This document shows positions 30,297 to 45,962 of a DNA stretch of 64,000 nt, one piece after another. Positions within the stretch are counted from its first letter, which is position 1; each line of letters opens with the position of its first letter. Under the pieces are notes generated by a model. It did not search any database and was not told the DNA's origin. It saw nothing but the letters and a program-made list of their open reading frames with translations. A program made the position numbers and the translations under genes. The DNA is taken from positions 124,001 through 188,000 of IMG/VR virus record IMGVR_UViG_3300027759_004177; one strand, given 5' to 3'.

Positions 30297-31721
30297 TTAT
30301 TCAGACTTGCTTTTGAGTCCAGCAATCATTTGCTTTAATTTATTGCTTTCTACGCTGGAGCCCGGCGGTGGGGCAGTATCTTTTTCTAGGTTCCATCCTT
30401 CTTTGACCACTGGATTAAGTGTGGTTGTGGGTTTGAGTTGATTTAAGATATTGGCCGCGGGTCTAAATTGACCCCCTGAACTTTCCTGTCCTTCTTCTCC
30501 GGGATCAGTGATACGCATGGTTTCGATGTTGTACTCCAAGTCGATCTTCATACCAACACCTGTACTACTGCGACTCTTCATACACTGGATTTGATAGCGT
30601 CCACGTTCTTTCATGGCTCTGCTTGTAAAGATACCAAACACGTTGTCGGCTGTGTTGATCTTTGAAATACCACCAGCAATATGACTGTGGTCAAACTCAA
30701 TTTCTTCTACCGCACTACGATTCAACTGCGAAGCTGTCACAAACAACACATTGAGTTCTTGCGATAAATTACGCAGTTCTTCTGCCACATATTTGTCTTT
30801 GATAAACTGATCATTGGGATTGACTTTGACACTCACAGGCATTACCAAGTCCAAGTAGTCGACCATCACAAAGTCTACCTTGTTATTAGTTTGTATTTGA
30901 TACTCTTTGATAAAGCTACGGATGTCATTTACGTTGCTCTGTGCCGGCAAGGCCTTAATACGATACTTGCCAGACTTCTTGCCCACCATCTTGACTTTGA
31001 GTTCTGTGGTTTCAATGTCCTTGCGTATGTCTTTAGTGCCTGTGCTGGTCAACATGGCGTCTGTTCTTAGGGCTACAAGTTCTTCACTCAGTTCTAAACT
31101 CACATACACACCACTCAGTCCTTGTTGTAACCAACTCAGTGCTATGTTCATCATGACCAAACTCTTGCCTGAACCTGAACCACCAGCAAAGATATTGAGT
31201 TCTCCACGACTCATGCCGCCGTACAAGATCTTGTCCATGGTGGGCCAACCTGTGCTCACTTGTCCGCCACTATTATAGTATTTGTCAATACGTGCTTTGG
31301 GATCAGCAAAATAATCTGTACCCAAGTCTTTGGTCAGGCCAATTTGTACCGCGTCTTTGATCAGTTTTTCCACAGGATCGTAATCGCCTTCTTCCAACAG
31401 GTCAGCGGCTTTGAGAATAGCACGGCTAAGTTCTTCCTTGCGACTAAATCCTTCAAACTCCTGCATAAACCATTCTTGATGTCCATCAATGGCTGTGGGA
31501 ATGGGTCTAAGTTCTACGCCAGTCACTGCTTGGATCTGTTCGTATGTGGGAAGTGTTTTATATTCAGCCGAGTGCGTGGCAATAAACTTGGCCACATCAC
31601 GCAGACTGCGATCAAAATTTTCTGGATTGTAAATGTTTTGCACCCGCACATAACTCTGTGCGTCCTGCATCATTAGTTCTAAAAATAATTTTTGTATTTC
31701 GGGTGTGTAATCAGTGGCCAT
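30297..31721 (-). CDS. Replicative DnaB/gp41-like helicase
   Basis: GGSGSGKS Walker A, VDYLD Walker B, TASQLNR, KSRS. Confidence 0.93.
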   Translation of the reverse strand: MATDYTPEIQKLFLELMMQDAQSYVRVQNIYNPENFDRSLRDVAKFIATHSAEYKTLPTYEQIQAVTGVELRPIPTAIDGHQEWFMQEFEGFSRKEELSRAILKAADLLEEGDYDPVEKLIKDAVQIGLTKDLGTDYFADPKARIDKYYNSGGQVSTGWPTMDKILYGGMSRGELNIFAGGSGSGKSLVMMNIALSWLQQGLSGVYVSLELSEELVALRTDAMLTSTGTKDIRKDIETTELKVKMVGKKSGKYRIKALPAQSNVNDIRSFIKEYQIQTNNKVDFVMVDYLDLVMPVSVKVNPNDQFIKDKYVAEELRNLSQELNVLFVTASQLNRSAVEEIEFDHSHIAGGISKINTADNVFGIFTSRAMKERGRYQIQCMKSRSSTGVGMKIDLEYNIETMRITDPGEEGQESSGGQFRPAANILNQLKPTTTLNPVVKEGWNLEKDTAPPPGSSVESNKLKQMIAGLKSKSE

Positions 31722-31723
31722 AG

Positions 31724-32758
31724 TTAATTATATATTTTCTTTCGACGTAGTTCAATTTTTAATCGGTTCGATTGTCTAGCTTCTAATATTGTTTTGATCA
31801 CAAACAATTTACCAAATGCCGCTACTGCACTGGCAACGTCTTTGTGCGTTTCTTGCCATACAGGAAAACTCACTGTCCATCCGTATTCTATTGCTGTGTC
31901 TACTAGTCGAGCACCGGCTCGATCAGCATCGGGTACCACAATGACTTCTCTGCCTAGGCTGTCAATAATGTCTGCTTGTGTCTCATGACATTCGTTACCT
32001 AAGATAGCAACTCCATCTATGGCCATGGCATCAAACGGTCCTTCTACCACAACAACAAATTTGGCATCCTTTGGTTGCCGATCCACGTTGAACACATAGT
32101 TGGGTTCGTGGCTGTTGTGATACTTGGGCTTGACACCTTCATCAAATGTTCTAGCTGTGTAGCCAATGATTTGATTGTGCCAAGTAAACGGCACAATCAC
32201 ACGACGATTTAGATTGTATTGTGTTTCTGGAGTCCAATAAAATTCATACCGGCTTAAATCTATCTTGCGTGTGGCCGAGTACAGTACAGCATTGTGAAAT
32301 TCTTTGGGTACATCTCTATCATTATTTAAGGTATAAAAATTACTTAATGCGTGAAATGATTGTGCTTCTTCAGGTAAGGGACGAGCTTTGAACTTGATTT
32401 CTTCTTGCTCTGCTACTTCTATCAATGTTTCCGGAGCTACCAGTTCACGTATGCGGATAGCATCAATGACCAGTCGCTTAATTGTGCCTTCGTCTGCACC
32501 CAACCAGTTCAGTAGTTTGCGAAACTTGTAGGTCAAATGACGACCGGGAACATAACTGGCTTTGAAGTTGCAATTAAAACAGTGATAGCTGACGCCACCA
32601 TCAGCGTTCATTACTAGTCCGCCACGACCACGTGTATCCGCCGTTTCGCCATTGTGTGAGCAACAAACACCGTTGAAACTGATCCAACCCGACGTGGCGT
32701 TGGTTTTACGTTTATGCGGTAATATTTGGACAACTGCGTCGCGAATAGAGTTCAACAT
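31724..32758 (-). CDS. DNA primase (zinc finger + TOPRIM)
   Basis: YHCFNC, VEGPFDA, PDAD, KD; adjacent to helicase. Confidence 0.88.
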   Translation of the reverse strand: MLNSIRDAVVQILPHKRKTNATSGWISFNGVCCSHNGETADTRGRGGLVMNADGGVSYHCFNCNFKASYVPGRHLTYKFRKLLNWLGADEGTIKRLVIDAIRIRELVAPETLIEVAEQEEIKFKARPLPEEAQSFHALSNFYTLNNDRDVPKEFHNAVLYSATRKIDLSRYEFYWTPETQYNLNRRVIVPFTWHNQIIGYTARTFDEGVKPKYHNSHEPNYVFNVDRQPKDAKFVVVVEGPFDAMAIDGVAILGNECHETQADIIDSLGREVIVVPDADRAGARLVDTAIEYGWTVSFPVWQETHKDVASAVAAFGKLFVIKTILEARQSNRLKIELRRKKIYN

Positions 32759-32847: not shown

Positions 32848-33594
32848 TTAATATCCAAACCTTGTTTTGTATGCGGCATGCTGTGCCTGTATCTCTGCCA
32901 AGGTCAATGCACCGTCCCAGACCTTGACCAGGCCCACATCGGCTGTTACAACTTCTGTATTTTGGACGGAACTGACATATCTACCAAACAATCTTAGGCC
33001 GTTAAATCCACTGACACCAGCTCTAGTTCCGTGAGTACCGGTAGGCGCAGTACTGCCGGCCGCATAGGCATTTGTGGTAGTAGTGCCGTTGGATGTCATC
33101 CAAGCAAATCTCCAAGCACCTGTTTGAGCTGTGCTACTACTGCCTAAAAATGACCCGTTGTAGAAAATATCTTGTACTCCACCGGCATTACCCCACAGGC
33201 CCATTAACCAGTCTGGACTGGCTGTGTTGGCATTTAACAATCTACCTGCTGTGCCTGACTGTGATCGGTAAACCATCATTACTGTATAGGCCTGTGAAGA
33301 GGATGAATAATTTGGACCAAACCTCAACATATCTGTGTCGTTGTTAGTGGTCTTGCGGAATATGCCACCAGCAGTTGATGCCCACGCCATACTGCCATTG
33401 GTATTGCTTGTGGTTATAGCAAAAGCCCCAGTGCCCGCTATGGTACTGCCGTTCGCAGGCATGGCCGCGTAGTTGGCCGCATCTAGATCTAACACCAAGC
33501 TGGCTGAGGTTGTTGGGCCGGCAGAAACTGCCACTGGTTTTTTATAAACTCTTTGTGATGGTTGATGTATTGAACTAAATCGACCTAATTTCAT
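32848..33594 (-). CDS. Concanavalin A/LamG-like virion protein
   Basis: LVLDLDAAN start, ADVGLVKVWDGALT..EI...KTRFG end. Confidence 0.75.
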   Translation of the reverse strand: MKLGRFSSIHQPSQRVYKKPVAVSAGPTTSASLVLDLDAANYAAMPANGSTIAGTGAFAITTSNTNGSMAWASTAGGIFRKTTNNDTDMLRFGPNYSSSSQAYTVMMVYRSQSGTAGRLLNANTASPDWLMGLWGNAGGVQDIFYNGSFLGSSSTAQTGAWRFAWMTSNGTTTTNAYAAGSTAPTGTHGTRAGVSGFNGLRLFGRYVSSVQNTEVVTADVGLVKVWDGALTLAEIQAQHAAYKTRFGY

Positions 33595-33597
33595 AGG

Positions 33598-35184
33598 TTA
33601 TCCATAGTTACTGATTTGGCCCAACACCCGATAAGCGGCGCCACCTAGGTGTATCAAGCTAAAGCTCATGATGTCTGTATTACTTGCTGTACCTACGCCA
33701 GCAACAGCTCCAACCCATCGAACAGTTTGGTTAACACCATTGACTTGTACGTTGGCCACACGATAAGCAGTGGCACCTTGGTCAACAATGATAGTAGCAC
33801 CAGAGACTGTGCTTGCAATAGCGTTGACATTGGTAAAGTTTGCTGTCACGTTGGCAGTTAAGGCAGCATAGAATGTGGTACCAAGATTAAAGTTGCAAGT
33901 CAAGTTACCACCACTATTACTAATGTTACCATAGGTTTCATAGTAGGCACTTTGTTGTACCACATTGCCAGTGACAGTTAGGTTAGCAGTAGTCACACCT
34001 GTTGTCAGGTATGAGGCCACGTTGGTGTTGCTGTAGGTTCCTACTGTGCTCAAGATGTTTACACCATTGGCAAAGTTAAATTGACTGGCATTGATGTTGC
34101 CTGCTGTGACATTACCTGTTATATAGGCGCCACGGTTGGCAACTAAATTGCCAGATGCACTGATGTTGCCTTCGTTGACCGCATTTCCAGCTGTGGAAAT
34201 TGAGCTAAATCCAGATATACTTGGTGCCGGACTAGCACCGGTTGTGATGATTCCACCAAAAGACATTATTAGATATTCGGCTCGTACATTACCTGAGTAT
34301 ATGGGCAGGTAAGCAGCCACGTTGGCATTGGCATAGGTGCCAGCCACTGTGCTCAAGATGTTTACACCATTGGCAAAGTTGTATTGTGTGGCATTGATGT
34401 TACCCACGCTAATATTACCAGCAAGGTAACCTGCCACGTTGGCGTTGGCATACACTTGTGTTTGTAATGTGGCAATACTTGTTGCCTGAGTGGCCGCATT
34501 GGCCACAGTACTGAAGGTTAGGTTACCATAAGTTTGATAAGCACCCAGGTTAGCATTTACGGTGTTGATACTGGTTGCTTGTGTGGCTGCATTGGACAAC
34601 AATGTTGTAATGTCTGCGGCTTGACTGGTTGCATTAGCTACTGTACTAAAAGTTAAGTTACCATAATTCTGATATGCCCCCAAATTGGCCGTAATTGAGT
34701 TTATACTTGTGGCTTGTGTTGCGGCATTGCTATTAGCAAAAGTTTGATACGCACCAATGTTGGCACTGGAAATATTTTGACTGGCCAAATATCCAATCAC
34801 ATTGGCATTGGCATAACTGCTGGTGCCATAGTTCAAGTTGGCATAGGTATAGAAACTGCCAATGTTGGCCGTGATGGCATTGATGCTGGTGGCCTGTGTA
34901 GCTGCATTGGTATGCAATGTGCCAATATTGGCACCAATGTAGGCCTCAACATTGGCATTGCCGTAACTGCTGGTACCAAATGTGGCATTAGCATAGGTTC
35001 CTAGAGCCTGTAATTGTACATTGGTTGCCAAGGTGCTCATACCACCTGCGGTTACGCCATCCTGTACACGTACAGTACGCAATCCAGTGTCCACAACCAA
35101 TTCACCCAATGGGCCCACATAGGTATTTGCCGCGGTAGTATTACCACGCTTCATTAAAATCTGTGATATATTGATACGTGCCAT
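33598..35184 (-). CDS. Tail fibre protein with Mtd-like N-terminal domain
   Basis: KRGNT....YVGPLGELVVDT....RVQDGVTAGG; shares repeats with the other fibre genes. Confidence 0.8.
   Translation of the reverse strand: MARINISQILMKRGNTTAANTYVGPLGELVVDTGLRTVRVQDGVTAGGMSTLATNVQLQALGTYANATFGTSSYGNANVEAYIGANIGTLHTNAATQATSINAITANIGSFYTYANLNYGTSSYANANVIGYLASQNISSANIGAYQTFANSNAATQATSINSITANLGAYQNYGNLTFSTVANATSQAADITTLLSNAATQATSINTVNANLGAYQTYGNLTFSTVANAATQATSIATLQTQVYANANVAGYLAGNISVGNINATQYNFANGVNILSTVAGTYANANVAAYLPIYSGNVRAEYLIMSFGGIITTGASPAPSISGFSSISTAGNAVNEGNISASGNLVANRGAYITGNVTAGNINASQFNFANGVNILSTVGTYSNTNVASYLTTGVTTANLTVTGNVVQQSAYYETYGNISNSGGNLTCNFNLGTTFYAALTANVTANFTNVNAIASTVSGATIIVDQGATAYRVANVQVNGVNQTVRWVGAVAGVGTASNTDIMSFSLIHLGGAAYRVLGQISNYG
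34043..34380. repeat. Internal direct repeat in fibre gene (35-bp exact core, 34043-34077 and 34346-34380)
   Basis: actgtgctcaagatgtttacaccattggcaaagtt occurs twice. Confidence 0.9.
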
Positions 35185-35185
35185 C

Positions 35186-35695
35186 TTAGATCGAACCGCC
35201 GTCTAGGGTGTAAGTGTCTGATTCTGCAGGCGGCGTTGAGTTGGCATAATAAGCCGGTAACACTTCTAAATCTAGTGGAACTCCGTAATTGTCGTCGATA
35301 TATACCGGACGTGTCACGTCTGTGCTGGTAACTGTGGTACTAAACGCCAGCTTGTAAAAACGCTGTTCTAGGCCGTTAATAGTGTTGGCATCAAATGTAA
35401 ATGTACCTTGTCCTAACTGAATATTTCCGCCCACATTGGCGCCAAACAACACAGGATAGCTTTTGACAGTCAACTGATTGGTTGGATCTTGTATACTTGC
35501 AGTAACACTACTGCCAGTCAAATCAACTTTTTTCTGGTCTTGATTTCGTATGATAACTTGGATAGGATTGTCTACACCTTGGTAGACTTTGATTGGGCGG
35601 CTGTACACTTGGCGGTTCCTTGTTGTAAATATTGCGGGGTCAAAAACCTGCACCTCGGCAAGATTTGGATATAAATATGCTTTGACAGTAATCAT
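35186..35695 (-). CDS. Virion protein (BppU/Ig-like)
   Basis: KVYQGVDNPI...NQDQKKVDLTG; late promoter upstream. Confidence 0.65.
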   Translation of the reverse strand: MITVKAYLYPNLAEVQVFDPAIFTTRNRQVYSRPIKVYQGVDNPIQVIIRNQDQKKVDLTGSSVTASIQDPTNQLTVKSYPVLFGANVGGNIQLGQGTFTFDANTINGLEQRFYKLAFSTTVTSTDVTRPVYIDDNYGVPLDLEVLPAYYANSTPPAESDTYTLDGGSI

Positions 35696-35730: not shown

Positions 35731-36105
35731 GTGGAAGAACACTACAAGCAACTGCTCGCACAATACCCATACCTAAGCCATATCACCTATGGCGGTAATG
35801 ACTACATTGGCATCATACAAAATTCAGACGAAGTTATAACTACACTTTATGACTTTGGCCTGCTCAAGGACACTGAAGTCAAGAAAACCTTCTTGAGTTT
35901 GGGAGAAACATGGTGGTGGGAAAGCAATAGGCTCATGCCCATCAATGTGTTTTTAAAGCAGGATTGGAGTGTATTCCGAGTGTGTCTACGTACCATGAAC
36001 AGCAAGGACGTAGAAATTAAAATGGGCCCTTATGTGAGCCTGAAAGAAATGGCCACTAAACGTAGCAAACGCAAATCAATAACCCTAGTTCGTAAGGTTA
36101 GTTAA
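35731..36105 (+). CDS. Conserved phage hypothetical protein
   Basis: GTG start, YIGIIQN, WWWESNR.MPIN.FL. Confidence 0.75.
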   Translation: MEEHYKQLLAQYPYLSHITYGGNDYIGIIQNSDEVITTLYDFGLLKDTEVKKTFLSLGETWWWESNRLMPINVFLKQDWSVFRVCLRTMNSKDVEIKMGPYVSLKEMATKRSKRKSITLVRKVS

Positions 36106-36666
36106 CAAGTTCATATTGACCACAACTAGATGACTGTATGCACAACTGTGGCTCTTTTTAAATGCATACTGTCCATCATCTGTTTGATCCCAGATAGTTT
36201 CTGCAACTTCTCGCCAAGTTTTTCCAATTAGATGACGCTTGGCTGGACGGATTATGGCCATAAACATCATTAGCCTGGGTATGCTATTAACTGCTTCGGG
36301 CATTTGAATCAGGGTCTTATAGTGATTGCCGATGTGTATTAATTTTCCGCAAAATTCAGGATCATACAATCGATCCCATTCGGGTTCTTGAGCCATCAAT
36401 TCTTGTAAATGTGCTTCGTTCTTTATCTGTGTATATAATGATACATTTAAAAAGTCTAGTTTTGTATAGCCACGTGCTTCAGCTGACTCATAATCAATGC
36501 TGGCACGACCTGTAAACGGATCTGCAGGAATATCTGTTACATACACACCTGTATTGTGTGCTACCCAATCACCGTCTCTGTTGATACTGGCAGGGGTGTG
36601 CTTTAACAAACTTAATGCTTGAGTGCGATCCGCAAAGTCAATGTCAATGTCTGACTTAAACTTCAT
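36085..36666 (-). CDS. Minimal DNA polymerase III alpha (family C) catalytic core
   Basis: SDIDIDF, HNTGVY, GYTKLDFL and FKKSHSCAY correspond to DnaE PDxDxDF, HAGGV, GLVKFDFL and FNKSHxAAY. Confidence 0.85.
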   Translation of the reverse strand: MKFKSDIDIDFADRTQALSLLKHTPASINRDGDWVAHNTGVYVTDIPADPFTGRASIDYESAEARGYTKLDFLNVSLYTQIKNEAHLQELMAQEPEWDRLYDPEFCGKLIHIGNHYKTLIQMPEAVNSIPRLMMFMAIIRPAKRHLIGKTWREVAETIWDQTDDGQYAFKKSHSCAYSHLVVVNMNLLTNLTN

Positions 36667-37343
36667 AGTCCGGCCTTTGCTAATATGTCACTGACCCATT
36701 CAGTATCTGCCAAGTAATCTTTAAATTTGCGTTGCCAGTGGTCGGGGTCTATCCACGGAAGTATGATCGCCACTTGTTCTGGACCCAGTTGATCCAGGAA
36801 GTCGACACCCGATGCACAATTATACACAATCCAAGGGCTAACACGACCGGTAGCAATATGATGTACCACACGATTGCTGTTACCATACCGAAAATAATCG
36901 CTAAAACCGTTTTTAAGGTCAGGATGATCGTCGGCATAATTTTGCATTTCATTTAAAGCCCTTTCAAGTGCATCTTGTGTTGCTTCTCTACGCAAGTAAT
37001 CGTGCAAGTATTCAACATAAAAATCGTCTTTGAGCCAGTGGTCAATCTTCTTGTTGTTCTTCAACAGCCACTCTAAGAAGGCCGGTGGATTGATGCCACG
37101 TATGCCCACCATGTGCCTGCCCCACTTGACAAACGCATTGTAATACGGACTCTTAACAAAGTCATCATAGCTTTTTAACTTGGCAGATCCTTGTGTTATT
37201 TCATAAAAACGCAAGTAAGCCCTGAGTCCCAGTTGCACACCAGTTTCTTTTTCTTGTTGCCAGCGTCGTTTGGGTTCGCAAAGATGCACAGCCAGGGTTG
37301 ATTCCTTGCTAAAATCCTTTTCACAATAACGACACTTATACAT
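36663..37343 (-). CDS. C2H2/C2HC zinc-finger protein
   Basis: YKCRYCEKDF..ESTLAVHLC. Confidence 0.75.
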   Translation of the reverse strand: MYKCRYCEKDFSKESTLAVHLCEPKRRWQQEKETGVQLGLRAYLRFYEITQGSAKLKSYDDFVKSPYYNAFVKWGRHMVGIRGINPPAFLEWLLKNNKKIDHWLKDDFYVEYLHDYLRREATQDALERALNEMQNYADDHPDLKNGFSDYFRYGNSNRVVHHIATGRVSPWIVYNCASGVDFLDQLGPEQVAIILPWIDPDHWQRKFKDYLADTEWVSDILAKAGL

Positions 37344-39019: not shown

Positions 39020-39520
39020 TTACCATACTTTTCCGTAATCGACTACTTCACTTTGGCGGCTGATATCTTTGATAAAGAAAGCACACATGGGCTTTGGGCC
39101 TTCAGTCAAGGGAATAGCCAATAGTTGTCCAGGTTTGAGTTTGGGAAAATACCATTTGACGTCTTGATAAATGTCCACGATCTCTACAGGATGGAACTCG
39201 GGCATGTAACTGGTCAGGGGATTGAATGTAAACACGTTGAATCCGCGATCATTGATGCTGGTCAATGGTACAACTTCCAGGTCGCCAAAGTCGGGTTCGC
39301 CTATTAGGATTTGCCAATCCACCGGCATGCGAATAGTGTTGTTGCCGATGCGTAGTACTAGTGCAGGACTGTTAAACGATTCCAAAAAAATCAAAGGTAT
39401 ATAAAAGTAATCGGGATCTTTGGGATCACTGTTGTCCAGTACACAAAATCGTACTTCGTCTATCTCGTCTGGAATTGAATCCATTGAGTAACTGGTGTTG
39501 TCTAGGGTTAGTATTCTCAT
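39020..39520 (-). CDS. Conserved hypothetical protein, Hint-fold-like
   Basis: Start MRILTL at ATGA overlap with uvsW; all-beta pattern. Confidence 0.65.
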   Translation of the reverse strand: MRILTLDNTSYSMDSIPDEIDEVRFCVLDNSDPKDPDYFYIPLIFLESFNSPALVLRIGNNTIRMPVDWQILIGEPDFGDLEVVPLTSINDRGFNVFTFNPLTSYMPEFHPVEIVDIYQDVKWYFPKLKPGQLLAIPLTEGPKPMCAFFIKDISRQSEVVDYGKVW

Positions 39521-40974
39521 TGCCAATCGGCCTTCTCTAATGTAAATGGGTAGTTGGCTTCCTTGTAAAAAGCCTTGCGTCGTGTCAGGTGTCGCTTGGC
39601 AAATTTGCAAGTGCTGGTTATGTCCCAGATTTGGACGTGATCTTTGTCTTCCGCCTTGCGGATGCCACGACCGATCGACTGGATGACGCGAACAAAAGAC
39701 TTACCGGGCTCAATAAGCACAAGATTAAATATCCTAGGGATATTAATGCCCACAGCAGCAACACCATAGGTAGCCACAATAATCTTATCACTGCTAATCG
39801 CAACTTCATCATATTCATCTTTCCTGTCTTTGGCTTTGGTGGCCCCCGACACAAATACTGCACGATCGCCTAGTCGTTCCACCAGTAATTTACCAGTGGC
39901 AATGCGATCTACTAGAACTAGCGTATTGCCGGTGCCGTTTACCCGAGTGACTAAATCAGCGATATAATCCAATCTCTCGGATGTTTCTACTAGATATTTT
40001 AATTCTGTTTGATAATTTGTATACTCCACATGATCAACCAACTGTACTATATTTACATGACAGTTTGCAAGATGACCAGCTTCTTGAAGTTCACTTGCAC
40101 TGAGCTTGCCCACCACATTACCTAGGCTACAGAAAATACTGACCGCGGCATAGTCTTCCTTGGGTATAGTGCCGGTCAGTCCCCAGCGGATGGGCACATG
40201 ACTGAACACACCTGTAAGCAAGGTCTTCAATGCATCGGCCTTGGCCATGTGTACTTCGTCAACCATGATACATACCACATCTTCAATGAAGTCGCCGATG
40301 GTACATTCGGCTTCGTGATTCCGTGTGTTCTTTAATAAGATATTTAGACTTTGCCAAGTGCAAATGGTATGTGTCCGGCCAAATTCTTTACGGTCGCCAA
40401 AATACACACCCACATCTAGTCCTAGATTCCGATAATCATCTTCGGTCTGTGTGACCAAGCTCTTGTTAGGAACAATAATGATGCTACGTCCATAGGGCTC
40501 TATGCTCTTACTTAGGGCCGCAGTCATGATAGTTTTACCTGCTCCGGTGGCAATTTCTTGTATGCTTTGTGGATTGGTTAAAAAGTTATTCAAGATTTCT
40601 ACTTGATAGTCACGCAACATAATGGGTTCACCGGCTCTAGGGTGTCCCGCAGGCCATGCTGTGCCGGCAAAGGTATCTTCTGCAATTTGATCAAATGCAA
40701 ATGAAGTTGAATATTCTCTAGTGTCTTCTACTTCAATATCGTAGCCTTGCTCTTCCAAGTAAGGCAAAATTTCTGGCAATAGATTAATATAAGTGCTACC
40801 GCCCAGCTGAAAAAACGCAACCTTGCCATCCCAGCGGCCAAGACGAACACTGGGTTGATACCTTGCCCCGGGAATTTCATATTTGAATTTATTAACGAGA
40901 TTTTTACGTGTGGTCAAATCCAGTCCTTCTATTTTGACATTGACTTCATCACGTATAATTAGTTTAGCTTGCAA
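39517..40974 (-). CDS. uvsW: UvsW-like SF2 helicase
   Basis: LRDYQ, ATGAGKT, DEVH, GLTGT, QSIGRGIR. Confidence 0.92.
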   Translation of the reverse strand: MQAKLIIRDEVNVKIEGLDLTTRKNLVNKFKYEIPGARYQPSVRLGRWDGKVAFFQLGGSTYINLLPEILPYLEEQGYDIEVEDTREYSTSFAFDQIAEDTFAGTAWPAGHPRAGEPIMLRDYQVEILNNFLTNPQSIQEIATGAGKTIMTAALSKSIEPYGRSIIIVPNKSLVTQTEDDYRNLGLDVGVYFGDRKEFGRTHTICTWQSLNILLKNTRNHEAECTIGDFIEDVVCIMVDEVHMAKADALKTLLTGVFSHVPIRWGLTGTIPKEDYAAVSIFCSLGNVVGKLSASELQEAGHLANCHVNIVQLVDHVEYTNYQTELKYLVETSERLDYIADLVTRVNGTGNTLVLVDRIATGKLLVERLGDRAVFVSGATKAKDRKDEYDEVAISSDKIIVATYGVAAVGINIPRIFNLVLIEPGKSFVRVIQSIGRGIRKAEDKDHVQIWDITSTCKFAKRHLTRRKAFYKEANYPFTLEKADWQ

Positions 40975-43797: not shown

Positions 43798-44261
43798 TAA
43801 TTAAAATATTGAAAGTACGTTTTTTCTGCTTCGATACGTCTTTTTTCAATTTGTTGAATTAATAATAGACTTGAATACAACTGAGTATTATCCACTCCAT
43901 GCTCTTTGTATCCTTCCATTAACATTTCTAAATATCCATCGCTGGGATATTCGTCGGGTAAATCTCCGGTCATATAATATGTCATACATTCCACTGATTT
44001 ACCATTATGTAATACACGAACCGTCTTCTTTAGATAATATGCAGGATAACCCTCTAGGGCATCTAATGCCAGTTCGCAATCAGCAGTAATTTCCCATAAT
44101 ACTCCCTGAGTAACAAACTCAGGATCAGTAATTATGTCCGCATGACGTGCAAAACGGAATTCATGTCCCATTAATGTGGCTCGGCCCAAACTCTGAGCTT
44201 TGGGGCAACGACTAGCCATTTGGGAGGTGTTGGTATTCATACCATATGCGAAATATTTCAT
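43797..44261 (-). CDS. Gamma-glutamylcyclotransferase (AIG2-like)
   Basis: YFAYGMN, M..RCP, GVLWEI, LDALEGYP..Y, PS..YL. Confidence 0.88.
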   Translation of the reverse strand: MKYFAYGMNTNTSQMASRCPKAQSLGRATLMGHEFRFARHADIITDPEFVTQGVLWEITADCELALDALEGYPAYYLKKTVRVLHNGKSVECMTYYMTGDLPDEYPSDGYLEMLMEGYKEHGVDNTQLYSSLLLIQQIEKRRIEAEKTYFQYFN

Positions 44262-44267
44262 AATACA

Positions 44268-44296
44268 ATTATATATTAAAAGGATTTATTGGTCAA
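44268..44296 (-). promoter_or_regulatory. sigma70-type promoter giving a near-leaderless mRNA
   Basis: TTGACC-N17-TATAAT, 6 nt before the ATG. Confidence 0.85.
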
Positions 44297-44297
44297 C

Positions 44298-44320
44298 AAA
44301 AAACCCGCTGTAGCGGGTTT
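44298..44320 (-). terminator. Terminator after groEL
   Basis: aaacccgc-taca-gcgggtttttt. Confidence 0.85.
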
Positions 44321-44339
44321 GATGTTAGTACACACTAAC

Positions 44340-45962
<1,623 letters not shown>

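What the first reader, a model, noticed from the sequence alone, without database searches (positions are those of the whole stretch)
36085..36666. 193-aa minimal family-C (DnaE) polymerase core with all three catalytic aspartates
Seen: DIDID, KLDFL and FKKSH..AY in a protein about one-sixth the size of DnaE, with no PHP, clamp-binding or OB domains. It is intact, ATGA-coupled to a zinc-finger gene, and near the clamp-loader-like and UvsW genes. Inference: not a pseudogene but a stand-alone primer-extending or primase-like nucleotidyltransferase, perhaps partnered with the zinc-finger protein. Similar small genes occur in some jumbo phages; I know of no established function.
Basis: partly seen in the sequence, partly recalled or inferred. 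Interest (0 to 1): 0.6.

Follow-up and report, generated by a model that had tools for sequence, protein, structure and literature searches.

The report
Half of a split mini-DnaE polymerase
This 193-residue phage gene is the catalytic-aspartate half of a tiny DnaE-like (bacterial replicase-type) polymerase whose nucleotide-binding half is encoded 116 kb away in the same jumbo-phage genome. This arrangement was described by computation in 2021 but has never been tested at the bench.

Summary
Window 36085-36666 (minus strand) is an intact 193-aa ORF with DIDIDF, KLDFL and FKKSH motifs. These map onto E. coli Pol III alpha D401/D403/D405, K553/D555 and K758-S759-H760.

An AlphaFold model (pLDDT 95) aligns over 189 of 193 residues only with C-family polymerases (Z 9.7-6.3; next fold Z 3.9).

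It is not a stand-alone core. The same 356,865-bp freshwater jumbo-phage genome encodes, 116 kb away, a 174-aa protein. That protein covers Pol III alpha residues 276-393, including the GRGS nucleotide-binding motif, and stops where the 193-aa protein begins.

- Both halves co-occur in Rak2-, PA5oct- and Atu_ph07-like phages and in thousands of metagenomic proteins.
- Rare natural fusions of 375-376 aa exist.
- A complex prediction scores 0.90 against 0.01 for the best control.
- Both genes are under purifying selection.
- PHP, (HhH)2 and a full thumb are absent; a family-B polymerase is present.

Iyer et al. 2021 (PMC7824862) already described this split minimal Pol III alpha in group 2.2 jumbo phages. 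This is a new member of a known but biochemically untested kind. The most likely function is a low-processivity accessory DNA polymerase, which is inferred, not shown.

The parts
36085..36666 (-). C-terminal subunit (193 aa) of a split minimal Pol III alpha-like enzyme. It carries the metal-binding aspartates D6/D8/(D10) and D71, K69, a short beta-hairpin where DnaE has the thumb, and a reduced fingers region with R140-P141 and K171-S172-H173 (steric-gate His). Its partner, the 174-aa N-terminal subunit, lies OUTSIDE the window at genome G000:C1:44183-44707, minus strand (= L002:1504-2028:-).
   Evidence: partner:
36663..37343 (-). Upstream gene (226 aa, PHROG 11058, function unknown), ATGA-overlapped with the target. 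It has an N-terminal C4-x2-C7...H20-x-C22 zinc finger that is invariant in five divergent phages. It is a conserved neighbour, not a shown partner.
35731..36105 (+). Convergent 124-aa gene (PHROG 11637, function unknown) whose 3' end overlaps the target's 3' end by 21 bp. It holds the same position in Atu_ph07, 121Q, Phosso, a Vibrio jumbo phage and 79 of 80 close relatives. A weakly similar gene (E 1e-4) also follows the natural fused form.
39517..40974 (-). UvsW-like helicase heading the same minus-strand gene string. This is syntenic context shared with Rak2-like phages.
31724..32758 (-). DnaG/gp61-like primase. It is replication-module context and the phage's real primase candidate.
   Evidence: synteny
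30297..31721 (-). DnaB/gp41-like replicative helicase (replication-module context).

Best explanation
The ORF is the C-terminal subunit of a two-gene, split, minimal C-family (Pol III alpha-like) nucleotidyltransferase typical of 'group 2.2' jumbo phages.

The 174-aa N subunit is encoded 116 kb away. Its residues 75-174 match E. coli alpha 276-393. It supplies the first palm elements and the G142-R143-G144-S145 triphosphate-binding loop.

The 193-aa C subunit matches E. coli alpha about 398-780, minus roughly 190 residues of thumb and fingers. It supplies the strand with D6/D8, the strand with K69/D71 and an O-helix-like finger helix with K171-S172-H173.

The two chains are predicted to pair edge-to-edge (C residues 9-11 against N residues 139-140). 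This would rebuild one Pol-beta-like sheet with a composite active site, so neither half should be active alone.

- Shown here: homology, fold, exact complementarity of the break point, co-occurrence, natural fusions and purifying selection.
- Inferred (about 0.55): the heterodimer is a template-directed, dNTP-using DNA polymerase of low processivity. It would serve beside the phage's T4 gp43-like family-B replicase in gap filling, primer extension or repair.

The confidence given is for the identity and the split-heterodimer architecture.
For: - Second DnaE piece in the same genome: PF07733 at 38.7 and 37.6 bits, over the cut-off, ending ...DLPIEEFLK-stop.
- HMM and structure maps are contiguous. 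N 106-176 aligns to DnaE 322-392, and N model 75-174 to 4jom 276-393 (Z 10.6) and 5lew 306-413 (Z 11.4). C model 1-193 aligns to 5fkw 398-780.
- The break point is conserved. Of 81 N-half genes, 78 stop right after [ED]F[LIM][KR] and 3 run one residue further (...FLKD).
- Co-occurrence: the same cultured phages carry both halves. All 5 large N-bearing IMG/VR genomes carry the C half 37-227 kb away.
- Natural fused proteins of 375-376 aa, in three 90%-identity clusters from separate samples, join N and C through a 10-residue linker.
- Complex prediction: ipSAE 0.90 in 3 of 3 runs against a best control of 0.01. The mark was reached by 58 of 80 solved complexes and 2 of 110 mismatched pairs. The runs agree in at least 98% of contacts and partner pLDDT is at least 87.
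- Catalytic residues are invariant across 84 sequences.
- dN/dS is 0.03-0.05 against the closest relatives, with a median of 0.11 for C and 0.18 for N.
- The steric-gate His is retained.
- The gene lies in the replication block and a family-B polymerase is present.
- Prior description: PMC7824862.
Against: - There is no biochemical evidence for the family anywhere in the searched literature.
- The enzyme lacks most DNA-gripping parts of C-family polymerases: thumb, about 100 residues of fingers, (HhH)2, PHP, and OB/clamp motifs. Templated synthesis on its own is therefore uncertain.
- The complex score may partly reflect the model's memory of intramolecular contacts in solved Pol III alpha structures.
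- N residues 1-74 have no assigned fold.
- Transcription evidence is a single 208-nt contig in one metatranscriptome, which could be DNA carry-over.
Confidence: 0.8

Rival explanations
1. The heterodimer is a Pol-beta-fold nucleotidyltransferase that is not a templated DNA polymerase. It could be an untemplated terminal transferase, a de novo primer-making 'primase-polymerase', or a maker of a nucleotide-based product used in phage-host conflict.
For: Extreme reduction: no thumb, no (HhH)2, no PHP, and about 190 residues of the Pol III core missing. Minimal Pol-beta-fold enzymes are commonly untemplated (general knowledge of the superfamily). The phage already has a full family-B replicase and a DnaG-type primase.
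Against: DnaE-specific finger elements are kept and conserved: R140-P141, and K171-S172-H173 including the sugar-discriminating steric-gate His. The gene sits in a replication-gene string conserved across the clade. The closest structures are exclusively templated C-family polymerases.
Confidence: 0.15
2. One reading: the 193-aa protein is a self-sufficient minimal polymerase or primase-like core, possibly working with the adjacent zinc-finger protein.
For: It carries all three catalytic aspartates. It is ATGA-coupled to a conserved CCHC zinc-finger gene. That neighbour is retained near it across distant phages.
Against: It lacks the hG[GS] nucleotide-binding motif and the first palm elements. 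These are supplied by a separate, co-inherited gene that ends where this one begins. Natural N+C fusions exist. The predicted N-C interface uses the catalytic strand itself. Zinc-finger adjacency is exact in only 45 of 79 close relatives and is interrupted in the four cultured-phage genomes examined.
Confidence: 0.03
3. A catalytically dead remnant or pseudoenzyme (decayed DnaE fragment) kept as a scaffold or decaying.
For: Small size, split state, and no Pfam hit for the C half.
Against: Catalytic residues are invariant across a family with 28% mean column identity. dN/dS is 0.03-0.11. Length is constant at about 190-200 aa among the hits listed from 7,986 related 90%-identity clusters. The fold is predicted with high confidence.
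Confidence: 0.02

Closest known systems
Split minimal DNA Pol III alpha of group 2.2 jumbo phages (Iyer, Anantharaman, Krishnan, Burroughs, Aravind 2021, Viruses 13:63; PMC7824862). Examples: 121Q gp16 + gp56, Atu_ph07 gp074 + gp316, and the PA5oct gp196 N half.
   Same: Same two families (PHROG 11778 for C, PHROG 11127 for N). The split is the same: an N-terminal NTP-binding protein and a C-terminal Mg2+/template-binding protein encoded by distant genes. It has the same company (a family-B polymerase, no other Pol III domains) and the same synteny around both halves.
   Different: At most 48% identical to any cultured-phage member. It comes from an uncultured freshwater jumbo phage. The zinc-finger gene is directly ATGA-coupled here. 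No DnaQ-like exonuclease was found in this genome, whereas CBB and Atu_ph07 are reported to have one.
Bacterial DnaE / PolC (C-family replicative polymerase alpha subunit)
   Same: Pol-beta-like palm with D401/D403/D555 equivalents. GRGS motif (in the partner). K553, R639-P640 and K758-S759-H760 equivalents. The structural match covers E. coli residues 276-393 plus 398-780.
   Different: 367 aa in two chains against about 1,160 aa in one. It has no PHP, no full thumb, about 100 finger residues missing, and no (HhH)2, beta-clamp motif, OB or tau-binding parts. The PHP-Pol3-(HhH)2 core is near-universal in bacteria (PMC3919608) but is not kept here.
Cyanobacterial split DnaE (DnaE-n/DnaE-c joined by a split intein)
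   Same: A C-family polymerase encoded by two distant genes (established knowledge).
   Different: There the pieces carry intein halves and are spliced into one full-length chain. Here both ORFs are too small to hold an intein. The N gene ends and the C gene starts directly at polymerase sequence, so association must be non-covalent. The break point also differs: it lies inside the palm, between E. coli residues 393 and 398.
Natural unsplit form (P0295, P0391, P0392; 375-376 aa, metagenomic)
   Same: N and C modules are colinear in one chain, joined by about 10 residues. Identity to the window's halves is 38% and 38-39%.
   Different: It is a single polypeptide, rare (3 clusters against thousands of split ones), and known only from short contigs. 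In a quick tree it nests among split forms with moderate support, suggesting secondary fusion.

Membership tests
C-family DNA polymerase (Pol III alpha: DnaE/PolC) | Pol-beta-like palm with the three catalytic carboxylates (E. coli D401, D403, D555) | tested here: met
   D6, D8 and D71 are invariant in 84 sequences. HMM and structural alignment to DnaE/PolC. Residue map.
C-family DNA polymerase (Pol III alpha: DnaE/PolC) | hG[GS] nucleotide-binding motif (E. coli G363-S364) in the same polypeptide as the aspartates | tested here: not met
   Absent from the 193-aa ORF. It is present as G142-R143-G144-S145 in a separate 174-aa protein encoded 116 kb away.
C-family DNA polymerase (Pol III alpha: DnaE/PolC) | Finger helix with K758-S759-H760 (steric-gate His, invariant in Pol III alpha per PMC8485763) | tested here: met
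   K171-S172-H173; H173 is at least 90% conserved.
C-family DNA polymerase (Pol III alpha: DnaE/PolC) | PHP domain N-terminal to the polymerase core (near-universal, PMC3919608) | tested here: not met
   PF02811 has no match in the whole 356,865-bp genome, while the control rings in 14 of 14 genomes. N half residues 1-74 match no DnaE part.
C-family DNA polymerase (Pol III alpha: DnaE/PolC) | Complete fingers plus the (HhH)2 duplex-binding domain | tested here: not met
   PF17657 and PF14579 are absent from the genome. tblastn with E. coli DnaE finds only the two halves. 189 model residues span E. coli 398-780.
C-family DNA polymerase (Pol III alpha: DnaE/PolC) | Thumb domain between the DxD strand and the third aspartate | tested here: inconclusive
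   Only 60 residues lie between D10 and D71, against 149 between D405 and D555 in E. coli. The model shows a beta-hairpin there. In the complex prediction it contacts the N half. The domain boundaries of DnaE are from memory.
C-family DNA polymerase (Pol III alpha: DnaE/PolC) | Template-directed DNA synthesis | not testable with these tools
   Needs a primer-extension assay with the purified pair.
Split minimal Pol III alpha of group 2.2 jumbo phages (Iyer et al. 2021) | C-terminal Mg2+/template-binding subunit as a stand-alone protein of about 190 aa | tested here: met
   PHROG 11778, E 1e-59, full length. 42-48% identity to 121Q, Atu_ph07 and Phosso members.
Split minimal Pol III alpha of group 2.2 jumbo phages (Iyer et al. 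2021) | N-terminal NTP-binding subunit encoded by a distant gene in the same genome | tested here: met
   Genome 44183-44707 against 160085-160666. PHROG 11127, E 7e-40.
Split minimal Pol III alpha of group 2.2 jumbo phages (Iyer et al. 2021) | Accompanied by a family-B polymerase and T4-like replication genes, with no other Pol III domains | tested here: met
   PF00136 in a 904-aa frame. Primase, helicase and UvsW. Absences.
Split minimal Pol III alpha of group 2.2 jumbo phages (Iyer et al. 2021) | The two proteins reconstitute one enzyme | tested here: inconclusive
   Prediction only: ipSAE 0.90 against a best control of 0.01. Natural fusions exist. There is no physical measurement.
   The fold is the Pol III alpha palm and fingers. 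The steric-gate His is retained. A DnaG-type primase is encoded separately at 31724-32758. rNTP use itself was not testable.

The most novel reading that the evidence does not exclude
The 367-residue, two-chain enzyme may be the smallest natural C-family polymerase, with an active site built across a subunit interface. Its activity might differ from ordinary templated DNA synthesis. It could be de novo or untemplated dNTP polymerisation, or synthesis restricted to a special phage substrate. Alternatively, it could be switched on by separate expression of the two halves from distant genome regions.
Probability: 0.15. Interest if true: 0.8.

Novelty: new member of a known kind. Interest (0 to 1): 0.45.

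Why it matters
C-family polymerases are the bacterial replicases. In bacteria they keep a PHP-Pol3-(HhH)2 core of about 900 residues. A naturally split version of about 370 residues with invariant catalytic residues defines the irreducible catalytic module of this family. Iyer et al. proposed it as a model of the family's ancestral state.

The family is very abundant in the environment. About 8,000 C-half and 4,600 N-half clusters at 90% identity were hit here. It is conserved in therapeutic-candidate jumbo phages (Rak2-, PA5oct- and 121Q-like), yet its activity is untested.

- rare natural fusions;
- an exactly conserved break point;
- a high-scoring heterodimer prediction with controls;
- measured purifying selection on both halves.

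For the scan, the main result is a correction: the gene is half an enzyme, not a stand-alone minimal polymerase.

Tried and rejected
- Pfam scan of the C half: no family.
- PDB sequence search with the single C sequence: 0 hits at E up to 10. Only structure comparison and family HMMs showed the link.
- Alignment A3 was built with a mis-set minus-strand range. It was discarded and replaced by A4.
- Alignment A5 was meant as a block alignment to fold the natural fusion P0295. MAFFT laid the N halves onto the C half, so A5 was not used and the fusion was not folded. The second fold job went to the N half alone.
- Genes flanking the fused form showed no tblastn similarity to this genome. Pairwise BLASTP gave only a weak match (E 1e-4) for the convergent downstream gene and none for the upstream 78-aa gene.
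- DnaQ/RNase_T exonuclease was sought as a possible proofreading partner: none in this genome.
- Expression: one metatranscriptome run holds a single 208-nt contig inside the ORF (36182-36389). Because these are contigs and DNA carry-over is possible, this is not evidence of transcription.
- The tree of C halves finished only in its quick form. P0391 and P0392 dropped out through my motif cut, and supports are SH-aLRT 80-94, unstarred. 'Fusion is secondary' is therefore only a lean.
- Literature searches found no experimental study of the family.

Full report
**1. The observation**

The ORF listing shows an ATG-started 193-aa ORF at 36085-36666 on the minus strand. The plus-strand frame is full of stops.

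The protein begins MKFKSDIDIDF, contains GYTKLDFLN and ends ...YAFKKSHSCAYSHLVVV.... Its start codon overlaps the stop of the upstream 226-aa gene as ATGA. Its 3' end overlaps by 21 bp a convergent 124-aa gene.

The window is positions 124001-188000 of a 356,865-bp IMG/VR virus record that CheckV rates 100% complete. Near-identical DNA occurs in freshwater metagenomes from about ten studies.

**2. Is it really DnaE-like?**

Pfam does not recognise the ORF, and a sequence search of the PDB finds nothing. Other evidence is clear.

- PHROG 11778 ('DNA polymerase', profile length 197) matches end to end at E 1e-59. The C-terminal 37 residues hit full-length DnaE-type PHROGs.
- A five-sequence family HMM aligns colinearly with E. 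coli DnaE at 400-421 (PDFDVDF), 596-641 (...LFRPG) and 739-767 (GYGFNKSHSAAYAL).
- With 84 diverse relatives (mean column identity 28%), D6, D8, D10, K69, D71, R140 and P141 are invariant. K170 and H173 are at least 90% conserved.
- By position these residues correspond to E. coli D401/D403/D405, K553/D555, R639-P640 and K758-S759-H760.
- D401, D403 and D555 are the active-site residues of Pol III alpha. H760 is its proposed steric gate against ribonucleotides (PMC8485763).
- AlphaFold2 gives pLDDT 95.2 and pTM 0.87.
- Foldseek's top nine PDB hits are all Pol III alpha structures (probability 0.66-1.00, best E 2e-3).
- VIA-align gives Z 9.7 (PolC 3f2b, rmsd 3.4, 189 of 193 aligned), 9.5 (Taq 3e0d 458-837), 9.4 (M. 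tuberculosis DnaE1 5lew 416-807) and 8.1 (E. coli 5fkw 398-780). It then drops to Z 3.9 for unrelated folds.

**3. It is half an enzyme**

Searching the phage's own genome with Pfam PF07733 (DNA_pol3_alpha) gave one hit over the curated cut-off at genome 44180-44413. This lies inside a 174-aa ORF at 44183-44707 on the minus strand (L002:1504-2028:-). It belongs to PHROG 11127.

This protein ends ...VVWGLGRGSSTASYILYLLGVHKINSLYYDLPIEEFLK-stop. That stretch aligns to E. coli DnaE 322-392 (...GPGRGSGAGS...FERFL).

Its AlphaFold model (pLDDT 85.9) matches Pol III alpha only. Residues 75-174 align to E. coli 276-393 (4jom, Z 10.6, rmsd 2.5, 98 aligned) and to DnaE1 306-413 (Z 11.4). The next fold scores Z 2.8.

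So one gene covers alpha 276-393 and the target covers about 398-780. The break falls inside the palm, between the GS-motif helix and the DxD strand. The 193-aa protein therefore lacks the hG[GS] nucleotide-binding element of the Pol-beta-like fold.

**4. Evidence that the two halves belong together**

(a) Of 81 N-half genes examined, 78 stop immediately after [ED]F[LIM][KR], and 3 run one residue further (...FLKD).

(b) The same cultured jumbo phages carry both halves at distant sites. Examples are 121Q (13.3 kb and 44.4 kb), Atu_ph07 (58 kb and 241 kb) and PBECO4. The counts per host genus are nearly the same in the two searches.

(c) All five large IMG/VR genomes picked for having the N half also have the C half, 37-227 kb away. 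Fragmentary contigs picked for the C half have the N half in 2 of 5 cases, as expected for records that are 29-74% complete.

(d) An exhaustive representative search found 400 relatives. The full-length ones are 183-219 aa, plus one of 375 aa, P0295. P0295 is N half plus a 10-residue linker plus C half. A follow-up search found two more fused clusters (P0391 and P0392, 376 aa, 78-81% identical) from other samples.

(e) The complex prediction for the window's own pair gave ipSAE 0.90 in each of three runs, with a best control of 0.01.
- That mark was reached by 58 of 80 solved complexes and 2 of 110 mismatched pairs.
- The runs agree in at least 98% of contacts, and partner pLDDT is at least 87.
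- There were 149-159 contacts. C residues 9-11 lie against N residues 139-140, and the C hairpin/loop 43-51 lies against N 74-80.
- Caveat from the tool: a high score can reflect memory of solved Pol III alpha chains, and it is not a measurement.

(f) Both genes are under purifying selection.
- C half: dN/dS is 0.03-0.05 against its four closest non-identical relatives, with a median of 0.11 over 98 unsaturated pairs.
- N half: 0.125 against its closest relative, with a median of 0.18 over 63 pairs.

**5. What is missing**

- PHP (PF02811), DNA_pol3_finger (PF17657) and HHH_6 (PF14579) have no match anywhere in the genome. The controls ring in 11-14 of 14 reference genomes.
- tblastn with full E. 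coli DnaE finds only the two halves.
- Between the DxD strand and the third aspartate the phage protein has about 60 residues where E. coli has about 150. Between the RP and KSH motifs it has about 30 where E. coli has about 118. Most of the thumb and roughly 100 finger residues are therefore gone.
- In bacteria the PHP-Pol3-(HhH)2 core is near-universal (PMC3919608).
- The phage has a family-B polymerase in a 904-aa frame and no RNase_T/DnaQ exonuclease.

**6. Surroundings**

The target lies in a minus-strand string: UvsW-like helicase (39517-40974), several small conserved genes, the CCHC zinc-finger gene (36663-37343), then the target. Downstream lie three unassigned ORFs, a DnaG-type primase (31724-32758) and a DnaB/gp41-like helicase (30297-31721).

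The order UvsW ... zinc-finger ... C half, convergent gene... primase is shared with Atu_ph07, 121Q, Phosso and a Vibrio jumbo phage (helicase follows the primase where the fetched stretch reached that far). In those phages one or more small genes separate the zinc-finger gene from the C half. Among 79 close relatives the two genes abut exactly in 45.

The N half has its own conserved neighbourhood: N half, a hypothetical gene, a GroES-like gene, then (in the four cultured-phage genomes examined) the gp44-type clamp loader.

**7. Mechanism**

- Shown: fold, residue conservation, complementarity of the halves, co-inheritance and selection.
- Inferred: the halves assemble non-covalently into one Pol-beta-like palm with a composite active site. 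The triphosphate loop would come from N. The metal ligands and steric-gate helix would come from C.
- Further inferred (about 0.55): a dNTP-using, template-directed, poorly processive DNA polymerase that assists the family-B replicase. The grounds are the kept steric-gate His, the kept DnaE-specific finger motifs and the replication-gene context.
- Main rival (about 0.15): a non-templated or de novo activity, favoured by the loss of nearly all DNA-gripping parts.

**8. What is known**

Iyer et al. [quoted passage not shown] It accompanies a family-B polymerase.

Earlier genome papers had noted a 'truncated' Pol III alpha (the N half) in CBB and Atu_ph07. I found no experimental study, and a 2026 jumbo-phage review does not mention it. 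The searched passages of the 2021 paper do not mention unsplit forms.

**9. Verdict**

This is a real, functional-looking gene. It is a new member (at most 48% identical to cultured-phage members) of a kind already described in silico.

A quick tree places the fused form inside a clade of split forms (SH-aLRT 80-94), hinting at secondary fusion, but that analysis is not finished.

Interest is moderate. The biology is striking and untested, but the core finding is published.

Noticed in passing
window 36663-37343 (-): A 226-aa protein of unknown function (PHROG 11058). Its N-terminal CxxC...HxC zinc finger is invariant in five divergent jumbo phages. It is always kept a few genes from the C half. 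The Pfam zf-C2H2 match is below threshold (E 0.004).
   Followed up: partly
window 35731-36105 (+): A convergent 124-aa gene (PHROG 11637, unknown function) overlaps the 3' end of the C half by 21 bp. The arrangement is kept in Atu_ph07, 121Q, Phosso, a Vibrio phage and 79 of 80 close relatives. A weakly similar gene also follows the natural fused polymerase (L015:1641-2000, E 1e-4).
   Followed up: partly
L014:1066-2193 and L015:519-1649 (proteins P0295, P0392; also P0391): Natural single-chain versions (375-376 aa) of the otherwise split minimal Pol III alpha, on short metagenomic contigs from separate samples. They are not mentioned in the searched passages of the 2021 description.
   Followed up: partly
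window 44340-45959 (-); genome G000:C1:43311-43685 (= L002:632-1006, -): The phage encodes a GroEL-like chaperonin (PHROG 5725, E 2e-182) in the window. It also encodes a GroES/gp31-like protein two genes downstream of the N half of the polymerase.
   Followed up: no
window 32848-35695 (-): Three ORFs (248, 528 and 169 aa) with no PHROG match sit between the C half and the primase. The 528-aa one is rich in repeated ATQATSI / NAN-type segments, like a fibre or other repetitive structural protein. Related phages have a 'virion structural protein' at this place.
   Followed up: no
L002:1507-2028 (-), residues 1-74 of the N half: The first 74 residues of the N-terminal subunit match no part of Pol III alpha or any other PDB fold in the second-look search. 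In the complex prediction they touch the C half. They may act as a clasp replacing the PHP domain's contacts.
   Followed up: no
P0325 (233 aa): A metagenomic protein whose first 105 residues are a C-half N-terminus, followed by unrelated sequence that resembles (from memory, not tested) the end of a pseudouridine synthase. It is probably an assembly or gene-call chimera.
   Followed up: no
window 36182-36389: A single 208-nt contig (2 mismatches) from one freshwater metatranscriptome lies inside the ORF. This is too little to claim transcription.
   Followed up: partly
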